Below are positions 29,849-61,107 of a stretch of 64,000 nucleotides of DNA, in pieces. The stretch's first letter is position 1. Each line of letters starts with the position of its first letter. The notes beneath the pieces are model-generated. The model was not told where the DNA came from. It saw only the letters and a program-made list of their open reading frames with translations, and did no database searches. Location: the IMG/VR virus record IMGVR_UViG_3300043410_001471, positions 181,437 through 245,436 of that record; one strand, 5' to 3'. The translations under genes were made by a program, and so were the position numbers.

Positions 29849-32800
29849 ATGAAAAAAGTGATTTTATCGCTTCTCCTTTCAGTATCAGCTTTTGTAGGAT
29901 TTGGACAAGTAACCACTTCCTCAATTTCAGGTGTTGTGAAGAATGAGAAAAACGAAGTGTTGGTTGGAGCAACAATCCAAGCAGTACACACTCCAACTGG
30001 TACGAAGTATTCTACATCTACCAATAAGTTGGGTAGTTATGTGTTACCGGCGGTTAGAGTAGGAGGACCTTACACAATTCAAGCAACATTTGTTGGTACG
30101 AAGAAAGACGAGGTTACAGATGTTAATACCCAATTAGGTACTACATCAAATGTGAATTTTTTATTAGTTGATGAGAACAAAACCTTAAAAGAGGTTGTTG
30201 TAGTTTCTACTCGAAATAACATTATATCGAGAGAAAGAACAGGTGCATCTCAACAATTCACTCGTAGAGATTTACAAAACATCCCAATTACGGGAGCAAG
30301 AACAATCGATGGTATTACAAAGTACAATCCAAACGGAAACGGAAACTCATTCGGAGCACAAGATTCTCGTTTGAATAACTTTACAATTGATGGTTCTCAA
30401 TTCAATAATGGATTCGGTTTAGGTTCATCAGCACAAGCGGGTGGTAGAACCGGAGCATCGGCAATTTCTTTAGATGCTATTGAGCAACTTCAGGTTAATA
30501 TTGCACCTTTTGATATTCGTCAGAGTGGGTTTACTGGCGCAGGTATCAATGCAGTAACAAGAAGTGGTACAAACGAAATTGAAGGTAGTGTTTATCAAAC
30601 ACAAAGAGATAATAGTTCTACATATGTAGGTGATAACGCAAGAGGAACAAAAGTAACTGCATCTAAATTTGATGAGAAAGTACAAGGTTTCCGTTTAGGT
30701 GCACCAATCATTAAGAACAAATTGTTCATCTTTGGTAACTACGAACAAATTGAGAAAACTGAACCAGGTACAACTTGGATTTCAACAGGTTCTCCATTGA
30801 CAGGTTCACAAATTAGTAGACCAACTTATACACAATTATCAGACTTATCTAAATTTATGCAAGATAAGTTTAATTACACAACAGGTCCATTCGAAGGATA
30901 TTCTAACACAAACGCATCTAAGAAATTCTTAGTTCGTATGGATTGGAACATCAACGACAAACATAAATTAACGGCTCGTTATGTGCATCACGATTCTGAA
31001 GCAGAGATTAATATTTCAAACTCTACATCAGCAGGATTCGGTAATAGAACAACTTCAGCATTAGCAATGAGTTTCCAAAATAGTGGTTATATCATTATGG
31101 ATAACACTCGTTCTTATGTATTGGAATTAAACTCTAAATTATCAAATACTTTACATAATAACTTAATCGTTGGTTATGATAAGCAAATTGAGGATAGAGC
31201 ATATCGTTCTCAAATGTTCCCAACAATCGATATTAAGGATGGTGCAACAACTCTTACATCAGTAGGTTTTGACCCATTCACTCCAGGAAATAAGTTAGAT
31301 TACAATACTTTCCACATTACAAACAACTTAACAAAGTACGCTGATAAGCACACTTTGACATTAGGTTTTAATTATGAGAAATACCAATCTAATAACTTAT
31401 TCTTCCCAGCATCTAATGGTGTTTATATTTTCAATAGTTTAAGTGATTTCTACACTGCAGCTAATCAATCATTAGCAAATGGTGGAGCACCTTCAACATT
31501 AGTTCCAGCTCGTTTCCAATTCCGTTATTCGGCATTACCGGGAGCAGTTGAACCAATGCAAACTTTGAAAACTGATAGATTAGATGTTTACGGACAAGAT
31601 GAGTTCCAAGCAACTGAAAACTTAAAGTTCACTTTTGGTTTAAGAGCAGCAATCATCTCATTCGAACAAACTGCATTGGAAAATCCAGCAGTAACCGCAA
31701 TGACATTTGCAGGTGGATTGAAGTTTAACACAGGTGTATTACCAAAAACACAAACACTTTTCGAACCTCGTTTCGGATTTAACCATGATGTATTTGGTGA
31801 TAGAAAAACACAAGTTAGAGGTGGTACGGGTATCTTCACTGGTCGTCCTCCATATGTGTTTATCTCAAACCAAGTGGGTAACAATGGTGTATTGACAGGG
31901 TATATTGATGTGAGTGGTTCTGCGGCAGCTAAATATGGTTTCACTGCAGACCCTAATAAATACTTTATCCCATCAACTCCAACTTTACCATCTACATTTG
32001 ATTTAGCATTTACGGAAGAGAACTATAAGTTCCCACAAGTTTGGAAATCAAACATCGCAGTTGACCAAAAGTTACCATTCGGTTTCATAGGTACTGCTGA
32101 ATATATCCAAAATGTAAACTTAAACGCAGTTCATTATTACAACGCAAACTTTGGTGTTCCAACTGGCGTATTCGCAGGTGTTGATAAGAGAGCAAAGTAT
32201 GCAGGAACTGATGCAGGTGTTAGAGTAAATGGTAATGTTTCAAACGCAATCGTATTAGCTAATTCAGATAATACTCGTTTCAGTTCATTAACATTGAAAT
32301 TAGAATATCCTTACCAAAAAGGTATCTTCGGTTCATTTGCATGGACAGTATCGGATGCTAAAGACTTTATGAGCGCGGGTTCAATCGCTTCAGGTAGTTG
32401 GACAGGTGCTAGAAGTATCAATGGTAACAACGAATTAAACTTAGCTAATTCTGATAACTTATCTCCAAATCGTTTAGTTGGTTTGTTAGGATATAGATTA
32501 GAATATGGTAAAGGTTTAGGTGGAGCAACTTCATTCACATTAGGTTATGTAGGAAATCAGGGTAATCCATTCTCTTACACAATTGGTGGTGATATGAATG
32601 GTGATAGAATTGCAGGTAACGAATTAATCTTCGTTCCATCACAAATGAGTGATATCAAATTCGCACCATTGACAGTTGGTACAAGAACTTATACTGAAGC
32701 TGAACAACAAGCAGCATTTTGGTCTTACATCGAGCAAGACGAATACTTATCTACTCGTAGAGGTCAATATGCTGAAAGAAATGGTTCATTCTTACCAATG

Positions 32801-33121
32801 TTACATAGATTCGACTTATCAGTTGTACAAGATATCTATGTAAAGGTTAAAGGTAAAAAGAATACAATTCAAATCAGAGCAGATATCTTAAACTTTGGTA
32901 ACTTATTGAACAATGAGTGGGGTGTTTCTCAAAGAGCAACTATCCCAACTATCTTAAACTATTCAACTACTAATTCGGCAGGTGAACCAGTTTATAAGTT
33001 AGCAACTCAAAAATTAGCAGATGGTTCTACTATCTTAGCTAGAGATACTTATCAATATAATTCATCAGTATTTGATGTATGGTCAGCACAATTAGGAATT
33101 CGTTATATTTTTGGAAAATAA
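29849..33121 (+). CDS. TonB-dependent outer-membrane receptor (Oar/SusC-like, N-terminal carboxypeptidase-regulatory-like domain)
   Basis: Signal peptide (FG|Q), plug motif NNFTIDG...GGINAVTRSG, C-terminal QLGIRYIF. Confidence 0.92.
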   Translation: MKKVILSLLLSVSAFVGFGQVTTSSISGVVKNEKNEVLVGATIQAVHTPTGTKYSTSTNKLGSYVLPAVRVGGPYTIQATFVGTKKDEVTDVNTQLGTTSNVNFLLVDENKTLKEVVVVSTRNNIISRERTGASQQFTRRDLQNIPITGARTIDGITKYNPNGNGNSFGAQDSRLNNFTIDGSQFNNGFGLGSSAQAGGRTGASAISLDAIEQLQVNIAPFDIRQSGFTGAGINAVTRSGTNEIEGSVYQTQRDNSSTYVGDNARGTKVTASKFDEKVQGFRLGAPIIKNKLFIFGNYEQIEKTEPGTTWISTGSPLTGSQISRPTYTQLSDLSKFMQDKFNYTTGPFEGYSNTNASKKFLVRMDWNINDKHKLTARYVHHDSEAEINISNSTSAGFGNRTTSALAMSFQNSGYIIMDNTRSYVLELNSKLSNTLHNNLIVGYDKQIEDRAYRSQMFPTIDIKDGATTLTSVGFDPFTPGNKLDYNTFHITNNLTKYADKHTLTLGFNYEKYQSNNLFFPASNGVYIFNSLSDFYTAANQSLANGGAPSTLVPARFQFRYSALPGAVEPMQTLKTDRLDVYGQDEFQATENLKFTFGLRAAIISFEQTALENPAVTAMTFAGGLKFNTGVLPKTQTLFEPRFGFNHDVFGDRKTQVRGGTGIFTGRPPYVFISNQVGNNGVLTGYIDVSGSAAAKYGFTADPNKYFIPSTPTLPSTFDLAFTEENYKFPQVWKSNIAVDQKLPFGFIGTAEYIQNVNLNAVHYYNANFGVPTGVFAGVDKRAKYAGTDAGVRVNGNVSNAIVLANSDNTRFSSLTLKLEYPYQKGIFGSFAWTVSDAKDFMSAGSIASGSWTGARSINGNNELNLANSDNLSPNRLVGLLGYRLEYGKGLGGATSFTLGYVGNQGNPFSYTIGGDMNGDRIAGNELIFVPSQMSDIKFAPLTVGTRTYTEAEQQAAFWSYIEQDEYLSTRRGQYAERNGSFLPMLHRFDLSVVQDIYVKVKGKKNTIQIRADILNFGNLLNNEWGVSQRATIPTILNYSTTNSAGEPVYKLATQKLADGSTILARDTYQYNSSVFDVWSAQLGIRYIFGK

Positions 33122-33186: not shown

Positions 33187-34854
<1,668 letters not shown>

Positions 34855-38649: not shown

Positions 38650-39498
38650 ATGTTGTTAAGAAAAGGTGATAATAACGAAGATGTAAAAAAATTACAAGCT
38701 AAATTGGGTGTAGAACCTATGGGTAATTTCGGACCAAAAACCGAAGAAGCCGTTAAAGCTTGGCAACTGAAGAATGGTTTAACTCCGGATGGTATTGTAG
38801 GACCGGCAACTTGGGCAAAGATAATGGGAGAATCCATAACTGCACAAGTTTCAAATACACAATCAGTAGCATCAACTCCAGCACCACAAGTTGCAGGATT
38901 AAAATTAGATAAACTTAAAGGACATGTTCCTCAAGTTGTAATAGATTCAATTCCAGAAGTTGCTTCTAAATTTGGTATCAACACTCCATTGAGAGTTGCA
39001 CACTTTTTAGCACAATGTGGACACGAAAGTGGTGGATTCAGAGTAACGCAAGAAAACTTAAACTATTCAGCAAAAGGTTTGAATGGTATATTCAAAAAGT
39101 ATTTCCCAACTGAAGCTGCAGCAGCGGCTTATGCTAGAAATCCACAAAAGATTGCTAACAAAGTTTACTCTAATAGAATGGGTAACGGAACTGAAGCAAG
39201 TGGAGATGGATACAAATTCAGAGGACGTGGTTATATTCAATTGACAGGTAAAGATAACTACACTGCATTTGGTAAATCAATCGGAGTGGATATTCCAAAC
39301 AATCCCGATTTAGTAGCATCTAAATATGCATTAGCATCAGCAGCTTGGTTCTTCTCTAAGAACGGATTACATAAGATGGCAGATGAGGGGGCAAGTGATG
39401 TAGTTGTAACAAAGATTACAAAAAGAGTAAATGGTGGGACAATTGGATTGCCAGATAGAATCAAACACTTCAAAGAATATTATCATTTATTAGCATAA
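38650..39498 (+). CDS. Endolysin: peptidoglycan-binding domain + GH19
   Basis: DGIVGPATW, AHFLAQCGHES, FRGRGYIQLTGKDNY, TKRVNGG. Confidence 0.92.
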   Translation: MLLRKGDNNEDVKKLQAKLGVEPMGNFGPKTEEAVKAWQLKNGLTPDGIVGPATWAKIMGESITAQVSNTQSVASTPAPQVAGLKLDKLKGHVPQVVIDSIPEVASKFGINTPLRVAHFLAQCGHESGGFRVTQENLNYSAKGLNGIFKKYFPTEAAAAAYARNPQKIANKVYSNRMGNGTEASGDGYKFRGRGYIQLTGKDNYTAFGKSIGVDIPNNPDLVASKYALASAAWFFSKNGLHKMADEGASDVVVTKITKRVNGGTIGLPDRIKHFKEYYHLLA

Positions 39499-42334: not shown

Positions 42335-43987
42335 ATGAAAAAATTAATTATGTTTTTAGGGATACTATTGATATCCTTAACTTCTTATGGACAATTGACA
42401 ATCAGTCAATCTCTATCACCTAACTCAAATTTAAAAGTGGGTGATACTATTACAGTATCTTACAATTTAACCAAAGGACAGGTAATCAAAAATCCTCGTT
42501 ATCTTTGGTTTAGATATCAGTACAATAACAAAGCATTGGCTTATGTATCTACTGCATTTAATCAAGGAACATCTGCACAAACTTTCTACACTGGTTGGAG
42601 TAACTACAAATTTACTTTCAATGGTGGTGCGAGTGATAATGATTTAGATGTTCAGTACGGATTGACCCCTTGGAATTATGCAGTAAACGCAGATTGGAAT
42701 GTTGGACAATTGACAGTTCAAAGAGCAGATGCATCTATTAGTGGTTTAATTGCTACTCAAAAGTATATCTTAAAAGACCAAAACACTTACAACAACATTT
42801 TCAAAATAGATTTAGCAACTGGTACTGATACAACAGGTGCAGCGGTTGGAACAATCTATGGTGGTGGTTGGTCATCATTGGTAGGTGTAAAAGGTAATAC
42901 ATCTCAATTCAAAGTAAAAGTTCTTTATCCACAAGGATACACTATTACTGACCATAGTGTTCAATTAATGAGATTGAAATCGGATGGTAGTGGTATGATT
43001 GATTGGTCACAACAACCTATTGCACAATTACCATTGGATGCAAGTGGTGAAGCACTTTTCACAACACAAGTTAAAGTTGGTGATTCAGTTGGTGTATTTG
43101 TTGGACCTGCATTTCAAAAAAGTTGGATGAATAACATTGTGACCGTATCCGATGCATATAAGGCATTTTTAGGACATGCACAAACTGATATTAGTGGAAC
43201 TGCAAACTTCTTTACATATCCTACATTGGAAAAAAGAGTTGGTAAAATAACCACTAATTCAAATCCATTTGGTGAAGGTGATTCATATGCATTATTTGCA
43301 CATGTAATGGGACAAGATATGACATCAGTATCAATGATTCCAACATCAACATCATCATCTATTAGATGGCAAAGTGGTTTGTTGAATCAAAGTTGGTTAG
43401 ATGGCACACCTACAAGTAGAGTGTTAATTGATTCTCCTATAAAAGAAGTATACGCAGTATATGCTTGGGGTGGTGATTTAAACTGGTCACACTCATCAGA
43501 ACCATCTGCGATTGTAGCTAAAATAAGTGCAGGACAATATACAAATGCAGTAAGTGATAAATCGGTAAATACAATCAAATCTATGAGTACTGCTCCAATG
43601 GCATACCAAACTTTGGCAGTAGAAACGGCTAAATTAAGTGTAACATCTACATTGGAAGGTGGTAAAGTAGTATTAACTACAAATTTAACAAAAGAAGGTT
43701 TAGCAGGTTTACAAGTGATTATGAACTACGATGAATCTAAATTAACATTGGATAATGTGATATTTGATGCAGGAAGTACAATCACAAACTTCTCAACACA
43801 TAAAGATGGTAGATTAACATTTGGTTCTATTGACCAATTGAAAACTGCGAGAATCAAAGTTGGTACTCCATACAAATTAATATTCACACCAAAAACACCA
43901 TTAACAAATACAGCAGGATTATTCTATTTTGTATTATCGGATGCAGTAGATGCTAGTGGTAATAAAATCGACTTAATAGTTGAATAA
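42335..43987 (+). CDS. Secreted beta-rich protein with cohesin-like domain(s)
   Basis: Signal peptide (SYG|Q); GLQVIMNYDESKL cohesin-like strand pattern. Confidence 0.65.
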   Translation: MKKLIMFLGILLISLTSYGQLTISQSLSPNSNLKVGDTITVSYNLTKGQVIKNPRYLWFRYQYNNKALAYVSTAFNQGTSAQTFYTGWSNYKFTFNGGASDNDLDVQYGLTPWNYAVNADWNVGQLTVQRADASISGLIATQKYILKDQNTYNNIFKIDLATGTDTTGAAVGTIYGGGWSSLVGVKGNTSQFKVKVLYPQGYTITDHSVQLMRLKSDGSGMIDWSQQPIAQLPLDASGEALFTTQVKVGDSVGVFVGPAFQKSWMNNIVTVSDAYKAFLGHAQTDISGTANFFTYPTLEKRVGKITTNSNPFGEGDSYALFAHVMGQDMTSVSMIPTSTSSSIRWQSGLLNQSWLDGTPTSRVLIDSPIKEVYAVYAWGGDLNWSHSSEPSAIVAKISAGQYTNAVSDKSVNTIKSMSTAPMAYQTLAVETAKLSVTSTLEGGKVVLTTNLTKEGLAGLQVIMNYDESKLTLDNVIFDAGSTITNFSTHKDGRLTFGSIDQLKTARIKVGTPYKLIFTPKTPLTNTAGLFYFVLSDAVDASGNKIDLIVE

Positions 43988-43988
43988 T

Positions 43989-46283
43989 ATGAAACACTTA
44001 TTAGTTACATTATTCTTATTCATATCATTTTTAGGGTTCGGACAGAGTGTATCTGCTCCGGACTCTAAATCGTTTATACCATCCACAACTGCACAAGATG
44101 CAAGTGGATTTGTATTGAGTGGATTCAATTCTACATCAACTCTATTAGCATCAATCAGTTTAGTAGAATACCCATCAGGTACTACATTCTATCTAACTAC
44201 CACAACAGGTTTAACTGCGGCAAGTGGATTTACATTGTCGGGAAATAAAACTCGATTAGTTGTAACGGGAACGATGGCTAATATCAATACGGCATTGGCA
44301 TCCCTAAAAGTAAATACTGGTTCGGTAGTAGGAAATGTTAAATTATCAGTAGCAGCAACAGTCAATCCAATCGGTTACTATTATAATGGTGTAAACGGAC
44401 ACTTTTACAAACCTGTATATCCTGGAACAACTTATACTAATGCAAGAGCAATATCTTTAACAACAACATTCAAAGGACAACAGGGATATTTGGTAACAAT
44501 TACATCAGCTTCGGAAGATGCTTTTATTCAAGCCAATGTTCCTCAAACCAATATATGGTTCGCCGCAACGGATGAAGTAATAGATGGAACTTGGGTAATA
44601 GATGCTGGTCCTGAAAAGGGAACTGTAATGAAAACAAGGAATGGTAATCTTAATGGAAACATTCCAGGTGTATATAACAACTGGGCAAGTGGTGAACCAA
44701 ATGGTAGTAATCATACTGAGGATTATGCGGTAACAAAATGGAATGGTAATTTATGGAACGATTTAAATAACAATTGGAATAATGCGTATGTAATTGAATA
44801 TGGAACTTGGAGTAATCCAGATGACCAAACATTTACCGAATTTTATACCAATTCAGTAAATCACTCAAATGGCTCAGTATTAAGAACTCAATTTAATTTT
44901 GATTTTGGTGGGAATGTAGATGAAACTAAATTCTCAGCAAAAGCAAACACTTATGTAAATAATGTATGGGGAACAACAAATTCAACTGCAAGAGCATTAA
45001 GTGGGTTAGGTAAAGTTGATATTACAAGTGATTTGGATACTGTTAAAATAAGTGGTAATGGTGTAAAAGCATCAACAACTGCTGGATATGCTGAATGGTG
45101 TGTAATATACGAATATGAAGTAACAAACCAAAGATATAGAGTTGGAATCGATAGTAGAGAGGTTACAGGTATTTTATCTGACCCATCAACAATCAGTAGT
45201 TTACAATTATTTGATTTATGGAATGGACCAGTTACCTATGGTAGTTATGACTCGAATGGTTGGACAGAGGTTTATATCTATACCACAACACCATTGAATT
45301 TCGCTGGTTCATCTTATACATCTAATATTAGAAATGGTGGTTCATATTATGCATTAACTGCAGAATTTACATTTTCACCAATTCAAAGTTACAAACAACA
45401 TGGAATTGAAATTGTTGCGAATTCACAAACTGAATTAAACACTTTATATACGAATATTGTAACAGTATCAGATGTTTATTTAGCATTTAAAGAATTATCG
45501 AATGGTGGTATATTGGGAAACCAAAGTGGATTGGAATTTGGAAATGGTATCCAATATATGAATGCGGATGTGGATGGTAATGGTTCATTTAATGAAGCAG
45601 ATACTTACAAACTATTACAACATTTGAGTGGGATTGCACCACTAACACAATATTCAGCATTAACTTATTTGATGAAATTATATAACAAATCAGATTATGA
45701 TGTAATAACAAAATCAAATTGGAATACACAATTAAATTCAACAAGAAGTTTGATTCCATTTAATTTGAACACTGGTGCATTGAATAACACTTACAATATA
45801 AATGTAACATGGGTAGGTGATGTAAACCTTTCACATTCAGCACAACAAACCCAAAGTAGTGTTGCAACTAATTCAATTAGAACTATGAGTTTGACAACTA
45901 ATTCGGTTTCAAATATCATAAACGCAGAATTGATGGGCGAAAATGTGGGTGGTAAGTTAGTTGTAACAATTACATTAGACCCGTTACAACAAGAAGTGGT
46001 TGGAACTCAATTTAATTTGAATTATGATAATACTGCTCTTAAATTTGAAAAAGTAGATTTTGTAACAAAGGGTAATCCTACCAATTTTGGAACTGATAAG
46101 GGAACATCTATAATATTTGGTTCTTTAATTACGGATGGTTCAACTACATTGGATAAAACGACTCAATACAAAATAACATTTGCACCACTAATGATGCTAG
46201 GTGATAATTTGGGATTAACATCTATATCACTAACTGATGCGGTTAATAAGAATGGTACACAATTAAAAGTAAAGTTAAACTAA
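43989..46283 (+). CDS. Secreted protein: C-type lectin + dockerin/EF-hand-like + cohesin-like domains
   Basis: Signal peptide (GFG|Q); YLVTITS..WF..W..YNNWASGEPN..WNDL lectin motif; DVDGNGSFNEAD; GTQFNLNYD. Confidence 0.75.
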   Translation: MKHLLVTLFLFISFLGFGQSVSAPDSKSFIPSTTAQDASGFVLSGFNSTSTLLASISLVEYPSGTTFYLTTTTGLTAASGFTLSGNKTRLVVTGTMANINTALASLKVNTGSVVGNVKLSVAATVNPIGYYYNGVNGHFYKPVYPGTTYTNARAISLTTTFKGQQGYLVTITSASEDAFIQANVPQTNIWFAATDEVIDGTWVIDAGPEKGTVMKTRNGNLNGNIPGVYNNWASGEPNGSNHTEDYAVTKWNGNLWNDLNNNWNNAYVIEYGTWSNPDDQTFTEFYTNSVNHSNGSVLRTQFNFDFGGNVDETKFSAKANTYVNNVWGTTNSTARALSGLGKVDITSDLDTVKISGNGVKASTTAGYAEWCVIYEYEVTNQRYRVGIDSREVTGILSDPSTISSLQLFDLWNGPVTYGSYDSNGWTEVYIYTTTPLNFAGSSYTSNIRNGGSYYALTAEFTFSPIQSYKQHGIEIVANSQTELNTLYTNIVTVSDVYLAFKELSNGGILGNQSGLEFGNGIQYMNADVDGNGSFNEADTYKLLQHLSGIAPLTQYSALTYLMKLYNKSDYDVITKSNWNTQLNSTRSLIPFNLNTGALNNTYNINVTWVGDVNLSHSAQQTQSSVATNSIRTMSLTTNSVSNIINAELMGENVGGKLVVTITLDPLQQEVVGTQFNLNYDNTALKFEKVDFVTKGNPTNFGTDKGTSIIFGSLITDGSTTLDKTTQYKITFAPLMMLGDNLGLTSISLTDAVNKNGTQLKVKLN

Positions 46284-46624
46284 TGAAGAAGATAATATTA
46301 ATATCGTTAATTTTGTTAGTAGGATGTACTAAACCAGAATTACCAACACCAGTATTGCCTGTTGAAAAAATATTTAATGCAACTGAAAGTTCAGTAACAA
46401 ATGGACAATCTATACACTTTGATTTACCATCGGTAGGAGTGTATACATTAACTTTAATAGATAAAGAAAGTGGGCAAGTTGTAAGTAGAGAAAGATTTAA
46501 TGGTATAAGTGGTGAAAATGTAAAAAAGATTTATACGAAATCATTACAAAGTAGATATTTATATTTGTTATTGGAAGATGTTACTAAAAAAGAATTAGGT
46601 AAAACAACAATAATAATAAACTAA
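46283..46624 (+). CDS. Lipoprotein with T9SS-CTD-like Ig domain
   Basis: Lipobox LLVG|C; C-terminal ~70-aa beta-sandwich pattern. Confidence 0.6.
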   Translation: MKKIILISLILLVGCTKPELPTPVLPVEKIFNATESSVTNGQSIHFDLPSVGVYTLTLIDKESGQVVSRERFNGISGENVKKIYTKSLQSRYLYLLLEDVTKKELGKTTIIIN

Positions 46625-46993
46625 ATGAAAAAATTAATTTTAACATTTGCGATAGCAGCTTTATTGGTAGGATGTAGTAAAGAAGATATCATCCCAACAC
46701 CTCAATCGGTATCGGAAGATTTGAAGATTGCAAGTTCGGTGGGTATCAAAGTACAATCACACTTTGTAACATCGGAAGTTGCAATGAATGTAAAAACTGA
46801 AACTGCTCAATCAGTAACGATTAAAATATTCGATATTGGAAATAGAGTAGTATCAAAAGAAACAATGAATGTAGTAGCAGGTGATAATGTACTTAAAGTA
46901 TATACATCAGCATTACCATCATCTGCATATAGAATAGGATTATTCGATGCAAGTGGTAGACAATTAGGAATAACAGATTTTAACAAATTATAA
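46625..46993 (+). CDS. Lipoprotein with T9SS type-A sorting-domain-like C-terminus
   Basis: Lipobox LLVG|C-SKED; IKIFDIGNRVV..G.N..LPSSAY. Confidence 0.7.
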   Translation: MKKLILTFAIAALLVGCSKEDIIPTPQSVSEDLKIASSVGIKVQSHFVTSEVAMNVKTETAQSVTIKIFDIGNRVVSKETMNVVAGDNVLKVYTSALPSSAYRIGLFDASGRQLGITDFNKL

Positions 46994-47006: not shown

Positions 47007-47327
47007 ATGGCAGAAGAACAAGAAGAAAAAGGTGGTACTTCAATTAAAAGTATCTTAATCGGTTTAGTGAGTACTATCACATTAGGAGTTGGTGGTTTCA
47101 TTACAAACAAATTAACAGGTGGTGAAGAAGAAAAACCTGCAGTACAACAAGCTGCACCTGTTATCAATATTCAAAACACTCAAAATCAATCTCAATCGGC
47201 AGGTGGTAAGACTGTAATCATTAAAGAGAAAGCAGTTGGTGGTGGAAATGCTCAACCAGCACAACCTCAACCAAAGCCTAAGAAGAAAGAAGGCGATGAG
47301 TTCAAAGAAGAAGCACCAAAGTGGTAA
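47007..47327 (+). CDS. Single-TM protein with Gln/Pro-rich tail
   Basis: Hydrophobic segment at residues ~14-33. Confidence 0.7.
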   Translation: MAEEQEEKGGTSIKSILIGLVSTITLGVGGFITNKLTGGEEEKPAVQQAAPVINIQNTQNQSQSAGGKTVIIKEKAVGGGNAQPAQPQPKPKKKEGDEFKEEAPKW

Positions 47328-48051: not shown

Positions 48052-48309
48052 ATGACTTTTAAAGAATGGGTAATTGATTTATTCAAAGATGAAAGAGGAG
48101 CAATATCAGTAAAACCTGTAATTGCATTCGTTGGAGCATTATTCTTATGTGGAACAATGTTAGTGAACTCTTTCTCACATGGTGATATCAAACCAGCAGC
48201 AGAATTGGTAAACGCAGTAATGGTAATCACAGCAATCGGAATGGGAGCTGATACATTAGATAAGTTTACACATAAAAAGAGTGAACCTAAAGAAGAAGAA
48301 TTAGGATAA
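48052..48309 (+). CDS. Small two-TM membrane protein (holin-like)
   Basis: Two hydrophobic helices, charged C-terminus. Confidence 0.6.
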   Translation: MTFKEWVIDLFKDERGAISVKPVIAFVGALFLCGTMLVNSFSHGDIKPAAELVNAVMVITAIGMGADTLDKFTHKKSEPKEEELG

Positions 48310-48318
48310 TAATTGAAA

Positions 48319-48346
48319 AGGGAGAACATAGTTTCTCCCTTTTTTT
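48319..48346 (+). terminator. Rho-independent terminator
   Basis: AGGGAGAA/TTCTCCCT stem + T-run. Confidence 0.8.
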
Positions 48347-49108: not shown

Positions 49109-49327
49109 ATGAAATATATTACATTCCTTATATTCTTATTTTTAGTTAGTTGTACGCCTGTTAGAAAAGTAAATGTTTATAGCAAACACAATTATTATCA
49201 AAGACATAGAACCAACACATATACATCTCCAACTTGGATTCCAGGTAGAGGTATCATATTGGAAACACATATACATAAGTTACCCAAAAGAAGTTACGCC
49301 CCTAAAGTTAGAAGAGGAAGGCATTAA
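49109..49327 (+). CDS. Small basic lipoprotein
   Basis: Lipobox FLVS|C. Confidence 0.65.
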   Translation: MKYITFLIFLFLVSCTPVRKVNVYSKHNYYQRHRTNTYTSPTWIPGRGIILETHIHKLPKRSYAPKVRRGRH

Positions 49328-50868
49328 TGAAAAAATGGTTAGTAAGTTTATCAATAATGGTTATGTTCATATTTGCTCAAGAAGCGAAAGGGCAAACCTA
49401 TACCCAAACATTCGTAGATAAATGTAGTGGACAAATCAAAACGGCAACAACTACTATGGTTAATGGTAACGCCGTTGTTTCCTTTTATGACCAAGTTAAA
49501 GTATTTACTCCATTGGAAGTACAAAGTGGAGCAGTTAAACTTTGGTTAAACGCAACATATTTAGCATATTCAACAATGGGTTGTCCTACTAACATAGTAG
49601 TTCAGCAAACAGTCCAACAAACTGTAAATAACGCAGTATCACAGGCAGCATCATCTGCGGCAACTCAAGCGGCTAGTGCGGCAGCAAGTTCAGCAGCTTC
49701 ATCAGCTGCGAGTTCAGCCGCATCAACTGCAGCAAGTTCAGCCGCAAGTTCGGCGGCATCTTCATCGGCATCTACGGCAGCAAGTAATAGTGCAAGTTCA
49801 GCGGCATCATCATCCGCTAGTTCTGCATCATCAACTGCGGCAAGTAGTGGTGCAACGGCATCTACATCATCAACTGCTTCAACTCCACCACCAGCAAGTA
49901 GTAGTTCATCATCTACGAATTCATCGAGTAGCAGTTCATCGAATAATAGTAATTCATCATCATCTTCATCCGAAACTAAATCGGAAAGTAGTAGTTCATC
50001 ATCATCTTCATCTGAATCAAAATCAGAGACTAAATCGGAAACAAAGAGTGAATCTAAATCCGAATCAAAATCTGAAAGTAAGAGTGAGGAAAAGAAAGAG
50101 GAATCTAAATCAGAATCTAAAAAGGAAGAGAAAAAAGAAGAATCTAAAAAAGAAGAAAAGAAAGAGGAGAAGAAGGAAGAGAAAAAAGAGGAAAAGAAAC
50201 AAAAGGCTCAAAATATGAATCCGTTGTTAATAGCATCGGATTTAACAACCGCTGAAGACCAGGATGGTACATACAATGCAATCGCATCGGTAGGTATTAG
50301 TAGAAGTTCAATGGCTGGAGATGTAACCTATTCCCTAAACTCTATGATATGGAGTTCATTAGACCAATTCGCATTAAGTAGTGGTATAACTAAAATGAAC
50401 TTTGAAGGTGGTAAGTTATCATCTATCAATTCATACTCATTGACATCGGCATATCTTAAAGGTAGTTGGATGGGATTGATGGGGTATACCTATATCAAAC
50501 CACATCCTAAATTGGGAGTATATGGATACAATGTGGGAGCAGTGATGTTAATGATGCCAGGTAGTAAACAAAAATGGGATGTATCCCTATCTACATCGGC
50601 AGTAGCATTTTGGACCAAACCATTTCAGTATAGTAAGAAATTAACACTTTCACCGCAAGTATTCGCAATGTATTCTCCAATTGGATATAATACATTTACC
50701 GGAAATACTGCAGTAGGTAGACACTTTGGATTTTTGGTAGGTTCTTCGGTTGATTATAAAATCAGTAGAAGATTTGGATTCTCATTTAACTATAAGTTGA
50801 ATATGAATACACAACCTGGTCAGAAATTTACAAGTAACTTTTTGATTGGAACAAGAATGATGCTTTAA
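49327..50868 (+). CDS. Secreted protein with Ser/Ala and Glu/Lys low-complexity stalk and beta-barrel-like C-terminus
   Basis: Signal peptide (AKG|Q); ASSAA and KKEE repeats; amphipathic beta-strands in the last ~210 aa. Confidence 0.75.
   Translation: MKKWLVSLSIMVMFIFAQEAKGQTYTQTFVDKCSGQIKTATTTMVNGNAVVSFYDQVKVFTPLEVQSGAVKLWLNATYLAYSTMGCPTNIVVQQTVQQTVNNAVSQAASSAATQAASAAASSAASSAASSAASTAASSAASSAASSSASTAASNSASSAASSSASSASSTAASSGATASTSSTASTPPPASSSSSSTNSSSSSSSNNSNSSSSSSETKSESSSSSSSSSESKSETKSETKSESKSESKSESKSEEKKEESKSESKKEEKKEESKKEEKKEEKKEEKKEEKKQKAQNMNPLLIASDLTTAEDQDGTYNAIASVGISRSSMAGDVTYSLNSMIWSSLDQFALSSGITKMNFEGGKLSSINSYSLTSAYLKGSWMGLMGYTYIKPHPKLGVYGYNVGAVMLMMPGSKQKWDVSLSTSAVAFWTKPFQYSKKLTLSPQVFAMYSPIGYNTFTGNTAVGRHFGFLVGSSVDYKISRRFGFSFNYKLNMNTQPGQKFTSNFLIGTRMML
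49640..50200 (+). repeat. Coding low-complexity tandem repeats (ASSAA / SES(K) / KKEE)
   Basis: Degenerate codon-level repeats inside the 49327 ORF. Confidence 0.85.
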
Positions 50869-51122: not shown

Positions 51123-51758
51123 ATGAAGAGAATTTTATCCATTGTTATGCTATTGGTTATAGCAACAACATTAAACGCACAAGATGTAGTACAATTGAAA
51201 CATCTTAATTACACATCACATTTCAGTAAATCAAAAAAATACCCTGTAATGGTAGAATGGTGGGAAACTAAAATCAAAGTTGGATGCGCAACTCCACTTC
51301 CTCGTAAGGATAACTTTAAGCCAGACCCATTATTACCAAAAGAAACTAACATCGGACAAGATTATGTAAATAGTGGATACGATAGAGGTCATTTAATGCC
51401 AGCAAAATCAAACCAATGTCAAACAACATTTGTACAAGATGAGTGTTTCTATTATTCTAATATGGCTGCACAAACACATAGATTAAATGCAGGAGATTGG
51501 AAATCATTGGAAACTCTAACAAGAGAATGGGCAGTAGTACAAGATTCGGTGCATGTGTGGGCTGGAAATGTTGGTGAGATTAAAAAAATAGGTACAACAT
51601 CAGTTCCAAAACAATGTTGGAAAGTAGTACATATTAAGAAAACAAATGAGTGGTTCTTTTACTTATTTGAGAATGATTTATCAGCACCAGATGGTATCAA
51701 TAACAATAAGGTGTTAAGAGAAGATATAGAGAAATTGACAGGTTTTAAATTCCAATAG
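51123..51758 (+). CDS. Secreted DNA/RNA non-specific endonuclease (NucA/EndA family)
   Basis: Signal peptide (LNA|Q); YDRGHL, SNMAAQ..LN..W. Confidence 0.92.
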   Translation: MKRILSIVMLLVIATTLNAQDVVQLKHLNYTSHFSKSKKYPVMVEWWETKIKVGCATPLPRKDNFKPDPLLPKETNIGQDYVNSGYDRGHLMPAKSNQCQTTFVQDECFYYSNMAAQTHRLNAGDWKSLETLTREWAVVQDSVHVWAGNVGEIKKIGTTSVPKQCWKVVHIKKTNEWFFYLFENDLSAPDGINNNKVLREDIEKLTGFKFQ

Positions 51759-54465: not shown

Positions 54466-54839
54466 GGGGATGCCCGGTATTGACAGGTATGAAGTGTTAG
54501 TACAATTGATGCAAGCAGGATTAGATGGAAATCCTTAAACACCTATCGAACAATAAACGCAGTAGAATTATCTACAATGACCTTCGAAGATGCTATGGCA
54601 TTCGTTGGTGCTGATTTAGCAGTAGCTGCCTAATCTCTCCCGCACACATCGTGGGACTTGAAATAGAATGTGAACCCAGGTGGATACCAATTGAACCCGA
54701 AATCGAATTGGAAACATTAATGATAACGAATGTATAAATCTTTATCTATTTTGTCAGTTAAGAAAAACTGACTAAGCTTGTGAATGAGGTTTATTAAACC
54801 ATATTTTGGACGAGGGTTCGACTCCCTCCATCTCCACCA
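54466..54839 (+). ncRNA. ssrA: tmRNA; predicted tag (A)AVELSTMTFEDAMAFVGADLAVAA*
   Basis: GGGGATG/CATCTCC-ACCA acceptor with G3.U70, TTGAC after the 5' end, GGGTTCGACTCCC T-arm, tag ORF 54559-54633 ending AVAA. Confidence 0.93.
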
Positions 54840-58270: not shown

Positions 58271-58341
58271 CGTGGGGTAGTGTAACGGTAGCATATTGGG
58301 CTCATAACCCTAAGACGGAGGTTCGAATCCTCCCCCCGCAA
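58271..58341 (+). tRNA. tRNA-fMet(CAT)
   Basis: C1.A72 mismatch, GGG/CCC anticodon stem, cloverleaf. Confidence 0.92.
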
Positions 58342-58967
58342 CTAAAGTAAAAAAATTTACAAATAAATTAGGAAATGTGAAAATGTTTTCGTATATTTGT
58401 AAAACAAAATGAGATAGTGGTTGAAGCCAACATCTAATAAAACCGAATGTGTGAACATCTTTCCAACATATTAGCGGAGGGGTTAAAAAGCCGGATATCA
58501 CTAATTCATTTTGAAAAATATAATAATTGTGGGAGAGTAGACTAATTGTAAATAAGACGCCCGTAAAATGTACAACATTTCAATTATTATTACAAATAAT
58601 TTGGAAGTTTGAAAAAACTTTCGTATATTTGTAAAGTTGTTCAGAAGTAGGAAGTATATATGGTGTAAGTAAACATAGCTGAAAATGTTCAACAAAAAAA
58701 ATTAAAATAAATTTGAAAGTTTATTTGGAATTGTGAAAAAAAAGTATTATCTTTACATAGTAAATGAGAAACTTATAGGCGATGAAAGATACTCGGTATT
58801 CAAATTTATAAAAAAATAATTGTAAAAATATTAGGAAGTTTGGAAAAGTTTTCGTATCTTTACAAAGTAATCAGAAATCGTAAAAACATACCTGAAGTAA
58901 GAGTAACAAAGTTTACTATACCAAATGGTTGAAATCTGATTACAAAAAATGTTCTTTAAAATACTGA

Positions 58968-59837
58968 AAAGATTATACATAGTAGATTCGTTCTACATAG
59001 TATAACAACGGCCGCCTATGGTCGTGAAATAAACTACGAAAGTAGGATAAAGTGGGTACATTGGTTAATGTAACTGCGGCTACTCCCCCGTAAGGGAGCA
59101 AGCTTGAGTAGGCAAGTGAGATATCATTCTGACTTTGTAGGTGGGGGTAACACTATCATCGAAGAGCCGGAATGACTGGGCAAATGTAGATTGTTCAGTT
59201 GAGATGGGAACATCAATAAGAATAACTCATAGAATTATTGTGAAAAGTAAGGACTTAATCTCTCCTTATTATTGCGTGATTCAATACAAAAGTGGTCTTG
59301 AGAATCAAGCTATCCGAAAGGACGTGAGATAAGATAATGTACGAGTGGTGTCGTTATTATCCTTTAGACTGGGACACCAATCCCTTCTATTGAAGATGAC
59401 TTGAAGTATGGTGATAGGGATATCACATTGAGTAGTATAGTATTCTGTTGTTCAAAAGATAACGGAGCTGGTGGCAAACCACTACTCGAATCCATCTACA
59501 AACCAAAACTCATTTGCATTTTGACGCAAAATCATAAATCAAGTAAGCAAAAGTGTTTGCCAGTTTCAGATGAAAGGTGTGTACATAGTAGGGAGTTGTT
59601 CCTTGCCACGATACCTCCGCAAGAGGTCTGTGATTCTTTTGAAAGGTTTCTAGCATCGCAAGTGTGAATCAGCTCGGCAGGGTTGAAGAAAATAAGTAGG
59701 AAGAGAGTAATCTGAAACTCTAAGAGTGGTTGGCTATACTAACCCACATTGAATTGGTACATCTCAAAAGGGTGTGGAAAAGAAAGGAAACAATAATCTT
59801 TCGAAAGCTGGTTCACAAAAAGGAGTATTCTCATCCT
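58968..59837 (+). ncRNA. Large structured ncRNA, GOLLD-like (boundaries approximate)
   Basis: ~870 nt, GC-richer than flanks, no convincing ORF, many short hairpins (CTAC-GAAA-GTAG 59034, CTCCC..GGGAG 59083, ACCTC-CGCAA-GAGGT 59613), directly upstream of the tRNA array. Confidence 0.7.
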
Positions 59838-59844
59838 TATATAA

Positions 59845-59915
59845 GCGAGATTAGTGTAACGGTAGCACAGCAGCCGTCCAGGTTGCAAGATGGGGTTCAA
59901 TTCCTTGGTTTCGCT
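59845..59915 (+). tRNA. Atypical tRNA-Gly(TCC), G33, weak T-stem
   Basis: GCGAGAT/GTTTCGC-T acceptor; anticodon loop CG-TCC-AG. Confidence 0.65.
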
Positions 59916-60131
59916 CTTCGTAGTGGTTTACGGCAGATAGGTTGGGTGTATCTCTCCAATAACTGGAAATCCACTTTAAAAAAAATGACAAATAGTGTGA
60001 AGATATGGTTTTCGTAGGGGATTTTCGCCTTAAACAATCTCAACCAATACGAATTAGTGTTGATGGTAAAAGCGGCTGTAGCTAGGCCTTTGAAAGTACC
60101 ACCCTACAAATCTTTCTTTTATAGCTTATAA

Positions 60132-60202
60132 GCGGTGGAAGTGTAATGTTTGCACACCTAGCGTCCAGCTAGGGGGAGGTGGTTCGAATCCACACCACCG
60201 CT
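60132..60202 (+). tRNA. Atypical tRNA-Gly(TCC), G33
   Basis: Perfect GCGGTGG/CCACCGC-T acceptor; CCTAG/CTAGG stem; loop CG-TCC-AG. Confidence 0.75.
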
Positions 60203-60326
60203 CAATTAACTAATTTATTGAGGATGATAATAACCGGTGCATGACACGACGTGGCGTATTTTGAAGATGAATTAGTTTATTTTATAAAAAAATAACTTTT
60301 AATAAATTTTTACATATATATTAACA

Positions 60327-60485
60327 ATGAAAACTCTTAACATACATACAAATTGTTCATTAGCGGCTCAAAGAAATGAGTGGCAAGGGCTTGGTATGTT
60401 TAGTACGATAGCAAATCCGGCAGTCTTGAATTTAGGCAAGGTGGATTATATTGGAAAAAAGTTAAGGGACACTGATGTAGGATAG
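60327..60485 (+). CDS. 52-aa possible leader peptide
   Basis: MKTLNIHTNCSLAAQRNEWQGLGMFSTIANPAVLNLGKVDYIGKKLRDTDVG, followed by a terminator. Confidence 0.45.
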   Translation: MKTLNIHTNCSLAAQRNEWQGLGMFSTIANPAVLNLGKVDYIGKKLRDTDVG

Positions 60486-60517
60486 TAGTGTAAGATTTAG
60501 ATAAAAGATATTTAAAG

Positions 60518-60556
60518 AACCCCTTAACTAATTAAAAAAAGTTAAGGGGTTTTTTG
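60518..60556 (+). terminator. Rho-independent terminator immediately before tRNA-Asn
   Basis: AACCCCTTAAC/GTTAAGGGGTT 11-bp stem + T-run. Confidence 0.85.
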
Positions 60557-60560
60557 TTTT

Positions 60561-60632
60561 GGGATGGTAGCTCAGAGGCAGAGCAGATGACTGTTAATCA
60601 TCAGGTCGAGATTTCGAAATTCTCCCTTCCCT
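60561..60632 (+). tRNA. tRNA-Asn(GTT)
   Basis: Cloverleaf, GATGA-CTGTTAA-TCATC; single mismatches in the acceptor and T stems. Confidence 0.8.
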
Positions 60633-60638
60633 CAAAAT

Positions 60639-60716
60639 AGAAGATTAGCTCAGTCGGTTCAGAGCAATTCGTTTACACCGAATAGGTCATAGGTTCGAAT
60701 CCTATATCTTCTACCA
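60639..60716 (+). tRNA. tRNA-Val(TAC), CCA encoded
   Basis: Canonical cloverleaf. Confidence 0.93.
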
Positions 60717-60722
60717 TTTAAC

Positions 60723-60804
60723 GCCGACGTCGCATAGTGGCAATTGCAAGGGACTGTAAATCCCTCCTCTTCGGAGTTCGTAGGTTCGAGTCCTACCGGC
60801 GGCA
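60723..60804 (+). tRNA. tRNA-Tyr(GTA)
   Basis: AGGGA-CTGTAAA-TCCCT, long variable arm. Confidence 0.92.
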
Positions 60805-60810
60805 CAAAAT

Positions 60811-60883
60811 GGAGCTTTGGTATAGCTGGTGCGTACGCTAGTCTGAAGAACTAGAGGATAAGGTTCGATTCCTTGAGGCTCCA
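60811..60883 (+). tRNA. tRNA-Phe(GAA)
   Basis: CTAGT-CTGAAGA-ACTAG. Confidence 0.9.
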
Positions 60884-60978
60884 CAATGAATTGGCTAAGA
60901 CATCGTAAAATCGATGGGTGGTGATTCCGAATTTATTTGTGAGCCACTTAAACACTGATAGCAATGTCAATTCAATTT

Positions 60979-61052
60979 GAACTCGTAGCTCAGTCGGTTA
61001 GAGCACCTCACTTTTAATGAGGGAGTCAATGGTTCGAGTCCATTCGGGTTCA
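60979..61052 (+). tRNA. tRNA-Lys(TTT)
   Basis: CCTCA-CTTTTAA-TGAGG. Confidence 0.93.
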
Positions 61053-61107
61053 CATAGTAGTTTTGAGGTTGGCGAATTCTACTTTAAAAAAATAATCCAT
61101 CCACCAT

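What the first reader, a model, noticed from the sequence alone, without database searches (positions are those of the whole stretch)
46283..46993. Tandem lipoproteins consisting almost only of a T9SS C-terminal-domain-like fold
Seen: both have an LLVG|C lipobox (46625 continues C-S-K-E-D, like the Bacteroidota lipoprotein surface-export signal) followed by a ~70-aa segment resembling the type-A T9SS sorting domain. Known: T9SS CTDs normally sit at the end of large SPI cargo. Inference: cargo-less lipid-anchored CTDs could act as decoys for host T9SS components (affecting gliding or receptor display) or as adaptors for the neighbouring secreted proteins.
Basis: inference. Interest (0 to 1): 0.6.

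Follow-up and report, generated by a model that had tools for sequence, protein, structure and literature searches.

The report
Phage lipoproteins with T9SS-tail fold
A 245-kb phage of Bacteroidota encodes two small outer-membrane lipoproteins whose only folded part is a relative of the type IX secretion sorting domain. They most likely tether the large secreted lectin-type proteins encoded just upstream to the host envelope, rather than acting as free-standing decoys.

Summary
ORFs 46283-46624 (113 aa) and 46625-46993 (122 aa) both carry an LLVGC lipobox and are paralogues (36% identity). Each folds into one 7-stranded beta-sandwich.

A profile of the family matches genuine type-A T9SS C-terminal domains (CTDs) at hhalign 98.4%, E 4.7e-15. 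It stays under the curated Pfam and TIGRFAM cut-offs and lacks the PNP motif. The host is Bacteroidota: 7 of 8 Sec signal peptides follow the Q-rule, and the phage GroEL is of Bacteroidota type. The family is large and was not found in 401 sampled Bacteroidota genomes.

The new point is a conserved gene module. In 8 of 8 divergent contexts the lipoprotein gene abuts a 550/767-family secreted protein that ends in a cohesin-like domain. A complex prediction of the 767-aa protein's C-terminal region with the 113-aa lipoprotein passed (ipSAE 0.79, best control 0.00). The predicted contacts fall on the family's conserved residues.

Best reading: these are cognate lipid anchors or docks for the co-encoded lectin/cohesin proteins. 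Whether the host T9SS is involved, as decoy target or export route, was not tested. I rate it a new variant of a known domain kind, with moderate to high interest.

The parts
46283..46624 (+). P0001, a 113-aa lipoprotein. Signal peptide with lipobox LLVG-C15, a Pro-rich tether (residues 16-29), and a CTD-like 7-strand beta-sandwich (residues about 30-113, nt 46370-46621). After Cys15 comes T-K-P-E, which is not a canonical LES. The Lys before the last strand (K107) is at least 90% conserved.
46625..46993 (+). P0002, a 122-aa lipoprotein. Lipobox LLVG-C17, then LES-type S-K-E-D (nt 46676-46687), then a CTD-like beta-sandwich (residues 40-122, nt 46742-46990).
43980..46283 (+). The 767-aa secreted protein; the likely true start is the ATG at 43989. 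It has an SPI signal exposing Gln, a C-type-lectin domain, a dockerin-like loop and a C-terminal cohesin-like domain. Its stop overlaps the P0001 start (TAATG). The predicted contact surface for P0001 is residues 651-767 (nt 45930-46280).
42335..43987 (+). The 550-aa secreted paralogue of the 767-aa protein, sharing the C-terminal ~300 aa with the dockerin-like loop and cohesin-like domain. In distant clades its orthologue is followed directly by the P0002-type lipoprotein.
47007..47327 (+). A 106-aa single-pass membrane protein: acidic N-terminus, one TM segment, a P/Q/K-rich tail, and a conserved C-terminal ...EEAPKW. It follows the P0002-type lipoprotein in nearly all relatives and may be a third module member.
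48315..48344 (+). The only strong terminator-like hairpin (12 pairs plus a T run) between 42335 and 51200. It suggests one transcription unit covering 550, 767, P0001, P0002, 106, 201 and 85.

Best explanation
P0001 and P0002 are phage-encoded outer-membrane lipoproteins made in infected Bacteroidota cells. Their single domain descends from the type-A T9SS C-terminal sorting domain but has been re-used as a protein-docking module. Each binds the cohesin-like C-terminal domain of a cognate large Sec-exported protein: P0001 with the 767-aa C-type-lectin protein, and P0002 with the 550-aa paralogue. This tethers those proteins to the host outer membrane through the N-terminal lipid.

Shown by sequence or tools: the lipobox, the LES in P0002, CTD homology and fold, the conserved gene pairing, a passed complex prediction, and interface conservation on the lipoprotein side.

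Inferred: actual lipidation, the membrane face, binding in the cell, and the P0002-550 pairing (from synteny and shared invariant residues only).

Speculative: the biological pay-off. A lectin coat on the infected cell could mask receptors or glycans (superinfection exclusion, or protection of progeny from debris), or could act with the adjacent lysis genes.
For: Lipoprotein and LES:
- LLVGC is present in both proteins.
- C-x-K-[DE][DE] occurs in 97/120 P0002 orthologues and 0/117 P0001 orthologues. The experimentally defined optimum is C-X-K-(D/E)2-X (PMC5080379).

Bacteroidota host:
- 7 of 8 SPI-like signal peptides in the 245-kb genome expose Gln at +1 (Q-rule, PMC5837995).
- GroEL's best 80 genome hits are almost all Bacteroidota, at 65-73% identity.

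CTD homology:
- hhalign 98.4%, E 4.7e-15.
- In 401 Bacteroidota genomes, 10 of the 12 loci fetched for the profile's matches have the match within 32 residues of the stop of a large ORF whose tail reads as a type-A CTD.
- Structural matches to the mirolase, PorU and NucA CTDs, and Atlas neighbours carrying PF18962.

Module:
- In divergent contigs L105, L107, L108 (two pairs), L190, L192, L193 and L194, every lipoprotein gene starts within 10 nt of, or overlaps, the stop of a 550/767-family gene (A3 profile E 1e-38 to 1e-70).
- 77 of 77 IMG/VR loci with enough downstream sequence keep 767...P0001-P0002.
- There is no terminator-like site inside the unit.

Binding:
- 767 C-terminal 298 aa plus mature P0001 gave ipSAE 0.79 (runs 0.85, 0.77, 0.79). 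The best of 3 controls was 0.00.
- That mark was reached by 58 of 80 solved complexes and 2 of 110 mismatched pairs.
- The runs agree in at least 88% of contacts, and partner pLDDT is at least 87.
- All contacts lie in the cohesin-like part and include the invariant N-Y-D and L-G-L motifs.
- On P0001 the contacts include S68, E70, K82, Y84 and T85, which are invariant across both paralogue families.
- Interface entropy is 0.74 bits against 1.32 bits for the rest of the domain, permutation p = 0.004.
Against: - The complex score is a model's own confidence. My own alignments were used, with rows from the same 61 phage genomes in the same order. The controls do not control for shared phylogeny, and the calibration counts hold only roughly.
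- No cross-pair control was possible (for example 767 with P0002), and the 550-P0002 pair was not folded.
- The interface on the 767 side is not more conserved than the rest of its domain.
- In about half of the close relatives an extra ~297-aa OMP-like gene sits between 767 and P0001, so adjacency is not absolute.
- If P0002 is surface-exposed, its CTD-less SPI partner has no known route across the outer membrane.
- The cohesin assignment is marginal: Pfam 24.9 bits against a cut-off of 24.1 for 767, and 20.8 bits for 550. The best PDB cohesin hit has E 0.0015.
- No expression data were found.
Confidence: 0.5

Rival explanations
1. T9SS decoy or plug. The lipid-tethered CTD mimic occupies the CTD-binding site of the SprA translocon, or the PorV shuttle or PorU attachment complex. 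This would shut down type-A secretion, gliding adhesins or receptor display in the infected cell.
For: The domain is a true CTD homologue, and its best structural matches include a CTD caught in the translocon (8glk_D, Z 9.4). P0001 keeps a near-invariant Lys before the last strand, like the almost invariant Lys of type-A CTDs that contacts PorV (PMC10994853). Translocon recognition is largely shape-based and plastic (same paper). Flavobacterium phage resistance maps to gliding and T9SS genes (10.1101/2020.10.02.323337 and PMC9804748), so T9SS-dependent surface structures are plausible receptors worth masking.
Against: No binding test against PorV or SprA was run; the single complex job went to the neighbour pair. 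The invariant PNP motif of CTDs is missing and the last strand did not align. P0002 lacks the Lys at the canonical position. The residues that are invariant across both paralogue families map to the predicted cohesin interface, not to a CTD-typical surface. This model also does not explain the strict pairing with a 550/767-family gene. CTD-like domains occur as internal repeats with no sorting role.
Confidence: 0.13
2. Split T9SS signal. The lipoprotein binds the CTD-less large protein in the periplasm and supplies the CTD in trans. The folded complex is then exported by the host T9SS and remains lipid-anchored, bypassing PorU and A-LPS attachment.
For: This uses the same binding evidence as the best explanation plus the CTD homology. 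It would solve how SPI proteins without a CTD reach the surface. In canonical cargo the CTD packs against the preceding domain, and disrupting that contact blocks secretion (PMC11285876). Phage-encoded T9SS cargo has a precedent (PMC7468147).
Against: No fused cargo-CTD ancestor of 550-800 aa was seen among 150 representatives. A lipid anchor passing through the translocon is unprecedented. P0002 already carries an LES for the separate lipoprotein export route. The CTD motifs are degenerate.
Confidence: 0.13
3. Lysis-cassette component. The lipoprotein is an o-spanin-like outer-membrane partner of the 106-aa single-pass inner-membrane protein and helps disrupt the outer membrane at lysis.
For: The P0002-type gene is followed by the 106-like TM protein in nearly all relatives. 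It lies next to a GH19/PG_binding endolysin in L004-L007 and in 3 of the 77 IMG/VR loci, and near a holin-like 2-TM protein plus the endolysin in L108. PHROGs gives only weak N-terminal similarity to Rz-like spanins and Cor (E 0.002-0.2, signal peptide only).
Against: The endolysin is 7 kb away in this phage (38650-39498) and its position is variable. The gene order is lipoprotein before TM protein, not i-spanin first. The mature proteins are well-folded sandwiches with no Cys and are not short Pro-rich peptides. The LES predicts surface rather than periplasmic exposure. The 106-aa protein has no coiled-coil periplasmic domain.
Confidence: 0.1
4. Stand-alone receptor-masking lipoproteins, analogous to T5 Llp or the Cor proteins. 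They would bind a host outer-membrane protein to exclude superinfecting phages, independently of the neighbouring genes.
For: They are small phage OM lipoproteins in a variable envelope-gene island. There is a weak PHROG Cor hit (E 0.002-0.004).
Against: The Cor hit covers only the signal peptide (residues 1-28). This model does not explain the conserved pairing or the complex prediction.
Confidence: 0.08

Closest known systems
Type-A T9SS C-terminal sorting domain (TIGR04183 / Pfam PF18962 Por_Secre_tail)
   Same: A 7-stranded 3+4 beta-sandwich at the extreme C-terminus. It shares the D...G-[RQ]-x-V, G-x-N and L..G.Y-type pattern, with profile-profile homology of 98.4%. P0001 keeps the Lys before the last strand.
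   Different: There is no cargo domain. The signal peptide is SPII (lipoprotein) rather than SPI. The PNP motif is absent. Scores fall below both curated cut-offs. The conserved surface is predicted to bind a cohesin-like domain. The family was found in phage contigs and not in 401 sampled Bacteroidota genomes.
DUF3244 (PF11589; PDB 4g5a, 3d33, 3sd2), small Bacteroides beta-sandwich proteins
   Same: Small, single-domain, CTD-like Ig sandwich proteins of Bacteroidota. Structural Z is 8.2-8.9 to P0002, and there is a sub-threshold Pfam hit (E 0.006).
   Different: The score is below the family cut-off (16.9 against 25 bits). DUF3244 has no known function or partner, and no phage or cohesin-module context is known for it.
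Type-B CTD cargo with a cognate PorP/SprF-like anchor encoded next to it (PMC9143113)
   Same: The logic matches: a large secreted protein and its dedicated small outer-membrane anchor are encoded as an adjacent pair, duplicated as pairs.
   Different: The anchor here is a lipoprotein beta-sandwich, not a PorP-type barrel. The cargo has no recognisable type-B CTD (no CHU_C or TIGR04131 hit).
Cohesin-based anchoring scaffoldins of cellulosomes
   Same: A cohesin-like beta-sandwich is used as a docking site to hold a protein on the cell surface. The same phage proteins also carry a dockerin-like Ca-loop motif (D-V-D-G-N-G-x-F-N-E-x-D).
   Different: The predicted ligand of the cohesin-like domain is an Ig-like sandwich, not a dockerin. 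The host is Gram-negative and the attachment is a lipid anchor. Similarity is marginal (E 1.5e-3 to PDB cohesins).
Phage-encoded T9SS cargo ('Cryophage', PMC7468147)
   Same: A phage of a Bacteroidota host carrying type-A sorting-domain sequences.
   Different: Those are ordinary enzymes with a covalent CTD. Here the CTD-like domain is a separate lipoprotein.
Phage OM lipoproteins Llp/Cor and o-spanins
   Same: Small SPII lipoproteins expressed by lytic phages in the host outer membrane.
   Different: There is no sequence or fold relation beyond the signal peptide. The architecture and predicted partner differ.

Membership tests
T9SS type-A CTD (TIGR04183 / PF18962) | Score above the curated family cut-off | tested here: not met
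   P0002 scores 15 bits (cut-off 27) on PF18962 and 13.3 bits (cut-off 23) on TIGR04183. P0001 has no hit.
T9SS type-A CTD (TIGR04183 / PF18962) | Homology to bona fide CTDs by profile comparison | tested here: met
   hhalign of A1 against A2 gives 98.4%, E 4.7e-15, 76 columns. Caveat: the A2 members were picked because the A1 profile hit them.
T9SS type-A CTD (TIGR04183 / PF18962) | 7-stranded 3+4 beta-sandwich at the extreme C-terminus | tested here: met
   AF2 models. Best solved match of P0002 is the mirolase CTD, Z 10.5. For P0001 the CTD matches are tied with generic Ig folds.
T9SS type-A CTD (TIGR04183 / PF18962) | Conserved PNP motif in the first strand | tested here: not met
   PNP is invariant in the 11 reference CTDs. 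It is aligned to QSHFVTSE or similar and is absent in both families.
T9SS type-A CTD (TIGR04183 / PF18962) | Near-invariant Lys in the last strand (PMC10994853, PMC11285876) | tested here: inconclusive
   P0001 has K107 at least 90% conserved, 7 residues from the end. P0002 has Ile at that column and a Lys at position -2. The last strand was not included in the hhalign match.
T9SS type-A CTD (TIGR04183 / PF18962) | Follows an SPI-exported cargo domain in the same polypeptide | tested here: not met
   There is an SPII lipobox and only a 15-25-residue tether before the domain.
T9SS type-A CTD (TIGR04183 / PF18962) | T9SS-dependent export and PorU cleavage | not testable with these tools
   This needs a host and T9SS mutants.
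Bacteroidota surface-exposed lipoprotein (LES-bearing) | Lipobox followed by C-X-K-(D/E)2-X (PMC5080379) | tested here: met
   P0002 has C-S-K-E-D, and 97 of 120 orthologues fit. P0001 has C-T-K-P-E and 0 of 117 fit, so it is not met for P0001. More distant P0001-type proteins (for example in L108) do carry C-S-K-D-E.
DUF3244 (PF11589) | Score above the Pfam gathering cut-off | tested here: not met
   16.9 bits against 25. The fold is similar, Z 8.2-8.9.
Two-component spanin, o-spanin | Small, Pro-rich, largely unstructured periplasmic OM lipoprotein encoded within or after an i-spanin gene with a coiled-coil periplasmic domain | tested here: not met
   The proteins are confidently folded sandwiches with no Cys beyond the lipid Cys. 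The gene precedes the TM protein, whose tail is low-complexity. P0002 carries an LES.

The most novel reading that the evidence does not exclude
The CTD has been split from its cargo. A lipidated, trans-acting T9SS sorting domain binds the cohesin-like end of CTD-less phage lectins in the periplasm. It escorts the folded complex through the host T9SS and leaves it lipid-anchored on the surface, independent of the PorU sortase and A-LPS. This would be a phage-invented way to hijack type IX secretion.
Probability: 0.13. Interest if true: 0.85.

Novelty: new variant of a known kind. Interest (0 to 1): 0.6.

Why it matters
T9SS sorting domains are known only as covalent C-terminal tags on Sec/SPI cargo. 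This work finds a very large, apparently phage-restricted family in which the same fold stands alone behind a lipoprotein signal. The family is genetically locked to secreted proteins with a cohesin-like end.

If the predicted binding is real, it defines a new docking pair: a CTD-derived sandwich with a cohesin-like domain. It would also show how abundant freshwater jumbo phages redecorate the Bacteroidota envelope. The same genome neighbourhood adds an OM barrel, a secreted nuclease, further lipoproteins and lysis genes. The finding makes a concrete question testable: can a CTD act in trans, or block the translocon?

Tried and rejected
- DNA and tblastn searches of cultured phage records found nothing for this region or for P0002. 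The nearest cultured relative, by PolB only, is Microcystis phage Mel-JY01 at 50%.
- A sequence search of the PDB with the family profile gave only noise (E at least 0.47).
- Foldseek against the PDB gave generic Ig-like hits without CTDs on top. The exhaustive VIA search was needed.
- The giant multi-repeat proteins that the profile hits score through many weak repeats of at most 17 bits each, so I did not use them as proof of homology.
- No curated PF18962 match exists anywhere in the 245-kb genome.
- Pfam found nothing for the ~297-aa and 254-aa OMP-like inserts, or for the C-terminal part of the 513-aa protein. There was no PorP/SprF or PorV signal.
- RNA evidence: one freshwater run guessed to be RNA holds 5% of the sampled words, stored as contigs only. 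I did not lay reads on it because contigs cannot show expression.
- Sigma-70 promoter matches were below the shuffle expectation (43 against 53.8) and are uninformative for Bacteroidota.
- A PorV test was prepared: PorV genes were located in four Bacteroidota genomes. It was not run because the single complex job went to the pair with the stronger genomic support.
Full report
**What is there**

The window is the last 64 kb of a 245,436-bp virus record with direct terminal repeats. Genes run almost entirely on the + strand. The phage has a T4-type PolB, a GroEL, ThyA, glycosyltransferases, 23 tRNAs and a tmRNA.

The two ORFs of the finding are real. P0001 is 46283-46624 (113 aa) and P0002 is 46625-46993 (122 aa). 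Both begin MKK, followed by a hydrophobic stretch and L-L-V-G-C. They are paralogues at 36% identity, E 8e-13.

The P0001 start codon overlaps the stop of the preceding 767-aa ORF (TAATG). The P0002 start directly follows the P0001 stop.

**The host is Bacteroidota**

- Of eight SPI-like N-termini in the whole genome, seven have Gln right after the predicted cleavage site. This is the Bacteroidetes Q-rule (PMC5837995). It has also been seen in Porphyromonas phages (PMC10367356).
- The phage GroEL's best 80 matches among species genomes are almost all Bacteroidota, at 65-73% identity.
- Genome GC is 31.7%.
- The sample of the one sequencing run that holds part of the stretch is a freshwater metagenome.

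**The family is large and restricted to phages**

Word searches found more than 3,500 (P0002) and more than 1,300 (P0001) clusters at 90% identity. All come from metagenomes, on contigs up to 288 kb.

An exhaustive profile search of 1.84 billion representatives found 173 relatives. Nearly all are 100-130-aa proteins with a lipobox.

In 401 evenly sampled Bacteroidota genomes no small homologue was found. There were only weak hits of at most 32 bits. Ten of the twelve loci fetched for these hits have the match within 32 residues of the stop of a large ORF. Their tails read as type-A CTDs, with PNP near the start and a ...G-V-Y-F-Y...T-K-K-M-x-L-x-K type end.

**Is the domain a T9SS CTD?**

By the curated thresholds it is not. 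P0002 reaches 15 of 27 bits on PF18962 and 13.3 of 23 bits on TIGR04183. P0001 scores nothing.

By homology and fold it is. The family profile (A1) aligned to eleven genuine CTDs (A2) gives hhalign probability 98.4%, E 4.7e-15, over 76 columns. The caveat is that A2 was selected by A1 hits.

AF2 gives confident seven-strand sandwiches. For P0002 the best of 48,161 solved chains are:
- the Tannerella mirolase CTD (Z 10.5, rmsd 1.9, 77 aligned);
- the PorU CTD (Z 10.0);
- the NucA CTD bound in the F. johnsoniae translocon (Z 9.4).

Complement MG domains score nearly as well at Z 9.8. In the ESM Atlas every nearest cluster outside the family is a Bacteroidota Por_Secre_tail protein. For P0001 the CTD matches (Z 7.0-7.9) are not separable from generic Ig folds.

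The differences from canonical CTDs are clear. The invariant PNP motif is missing, and the last strand is not part of the profile match. There is no cargo, and the signal peptide is SPII.

Type-A CTDs carry an almost invariant C-terminal Lys that contacts PorV (PMC10994853; PMC11285876). It has a counterpart in P0001 (K107, at least 90% conserved). P0002 has none at that column.

CTD-like domains also occur as 6-17 internal repeats in giant proteins. The fold by itself therefore does not imply sorting.

**Lipoprotein sorting**

The experimentally defined Bacteroidota lipoprotein export signal is optimally C-X-K-(D/E)2-X (PMC5080379). P0002 has C-S-K-E-D, and 97 of 120 orthologues fit. P0001 has C-T-K-P-E, and 0 of 117 orthologues fit.

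More distant P0001-type proteins do carry K-D-E. I therefore predict surface exposure for P0002 and leave the topology of P0001 open.

**The decisive context**

Upstream lie two paralogous secreted proteins of 550 and 767 aa. They share a C-terminal region of about 300 aa. It contains a dockerin-like loop and a cohesin-like domain. The evidence for these assignments is:
- Pfam Cohesin at 24.9 bits (cut-off 24.1) for the 767-aa protein and 20.8 bits for the 550-aa protein;
- PDB cohesins as best profile hits, E 1.5e-3;
- a dockerin-bearing protease aligned to the loop.

The 767-aa protein also has a C-type-lectin domain.

I looked up eight divergent family members on their contigs. In every case the lipoprotein gene starts within 10 nt of, or overlaps, the stop of a 550/767-family gene:
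- L105: 767-like followed by P0001-like.
- L107: 550-like followed by P0002-like.
- L108: both pairs, separated by lysis genes.
- L190, L192, L193, L194: A3 profile E 1e-38 to 1e-70.

The window's order (550, 767, P0001, P0002) therefore looks like one two-gene module nested in another, not a local duplication of the lipoprotein.

In the window's own clade, 77 of 77 IMG/VR loci with enough sequence keep P0001-P0002 downstream of 767. About half have an extra ~297-aa gene between 767 and P0001. That gene has a Q-rule signal and ends ...NFQF, like an OM barrel. Variable genes are also inserted after P0002, including a GH19 endolysin.

A 106-aa single-pass membrane protein with a conserved ...EEAPKW end almost always follows the P0002-type gene. 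The only strong terminator-like hairpin in 10 kb is at 48315-48344.

**Binding prediction**

I gave the single complex job to the pair with the best genomic support. That was the last 298 residues of the 767-aa protein (alignment A4) and mature P0001 (A5, residues 16-113).

- The score was ipSAE 0.79 (runs 0.85, 0.77, 0.79), with the best of three controls at 0.00.
- The mark was reached by 58 of 80 solved complexes and 2 of 110 mismatched pairs.
- The runs agree in at least 88% of contacts, and partner pLDDT is at least 87.

This supports binding but does not show it. My own alignments were used, so the calibration holds only roughly. Their rows come from the same phages, and the controls do not test for that.

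The contacts lie wholly in the cohesin-like part (767 residues 651-767). They include the invariant N-Y-D and L-G-L motifs shared by the 550 and 767 paralogues.

On P0001 the contacts cover strands 3-5 and include S68, E70, K82, Y84 and T85. These residues are invariant across both lipoprotein families but are not CTD hallmarks. Interface positions of P0001 are more conserved than the rest of the domain (0.74 against 1.32 bits, permutation p = 0.004). The 767 side shows no such excess.

**Interpretation**

The best-supported reading (about 0.5) is that these are cognate lipid anchors or docks for the co-encoded lectin/cohesin proteins, built from a re-purposed CTD fold. The arrangement resembles type-B CTD cargo with its adjacent PorP/SprF-type anchor (PMC9143113), and cohesin-based anchoring.

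The purpose of the tethered lectins is inference only. Receptor or glycan masking, adhesion, or a role with the neighbouring lysis genes are all possible.

A split, trans-acting T9SS signal is the most novel reading not excluded (about 0.13). A spanin-like role (about 0.1) is suggested by the recurrent neighbourhood of endolysin, holin-like and single-pass proteins. It fits poorly with the folded, Cys-free, LES-bearing proteins.

**Limits**

No host is known and no expression data were found. The 550-P0002 pairing rests on synteny and shared invariant residues. All functional steps beyond sequence features are predictions.

Noticed in passing
window 29849-33121 (+): A phage-encoded 1,090-aa outer-membrane protein. 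It has a Q-rule signal peptide, a CarboxypepD_reg domain and a full OMP_b-brl_4 barrel (E 1e-52), an architecture I recognise as SusC/TonB-dependent-receptor-like. This is unusual cargo for a phage.
   Followed up: partly
window 33205-34854 (+): A phage GroEL (PHROG 5725, E 2e-173). It is 65-73% identical to Bacteroidota chaperonins, with Cytophagales and Flavobacteriales on top.
   Followed up: partly
window 54466-54839 and 58271-63881 (+): A tmRNA gene (tag ends ...ADLAVAA) and a block of 23 tRNA genes at the right end of the genome.
   Followed up: no
window 51123-51758 (+): A secreted non-specific endonuclease (Endonuclease_NS, E 9e-32) with a Q-rule signal peptide and no CTD. The F. johnsoniae nuclease NucA is a T9SS substrate, so how this one exits the cell is an open question.
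   Followed up: no
window 42335-46283; motif near 45560-45620: The 550- and 767-aa secreted paralogues carry a dockerin-like Ca-loop motif (D-V-D-G-N-G-x-F-N-E-x-D-x-Y-x-L-L-x-H) upstream of their cohesin-like domain. They might also self-associate or chain.
   Followed up: partly
L115:3897-4790, L171:5089-5853 and about 40 other IMG/VR loci: The junctions 767|P0001 and P0002|106 are insertion hot spots. A ~297-aa OMP-like gene (Q-rule signal, ends ...NFQF), a 254-aa OMP-like gene, an 85-aa lipoprotein, a Cys-rich 239-aa protein, or the GH19 endolysin appear there in different relatives. None has a Pfam match.
   Followed up: partly
window 38650-39498 (+) versus L004:6393-7250: The endolysin (PG_binding_1 + GH19) lies directly after P0002 in a 288-kb relative but 7 kb upstream in this genome. 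The lysis genes move relative to the lipoprotein module.
   Followed up: yes
window 47007-47327 (+): A 106-aa single-pass membrane protein whose last ~15 residues (...KKKEGDEFKEEAPKW) are almost identical across relatives that otherwise differ. Distant versions also end in W. This looks like a binding tail; the partner is unknown.
   Followed up: partly
window 48052-48309 (+) and 49109-49327 (+): An 85-aa two-TM, charged-tail protein looks holin-like and sits just before the strong terminator. A 72-aa basic lipoprotein (FLVSC) follows the secreted 240-aa protein. The true spanin or holin set of this phage is unassigned.
   Followed up: no
window 49327-50868 (+): A 513-aa secreted protein with a long Ser/Ala, then Ser/Lys/Glu low-complexity stretch. 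Its conserved C-terminal ~220 aa ends in a barrel-like pattern. A homologue follows the P0001-type gene in L108.
   Followed up: partly
G000:C1:24945-25463 (outside the window): A third LES-type lipoprotein in the same genome (172 aa, ...VFVSC-T-K-D-E). It was not examined further.
   Followed up: no
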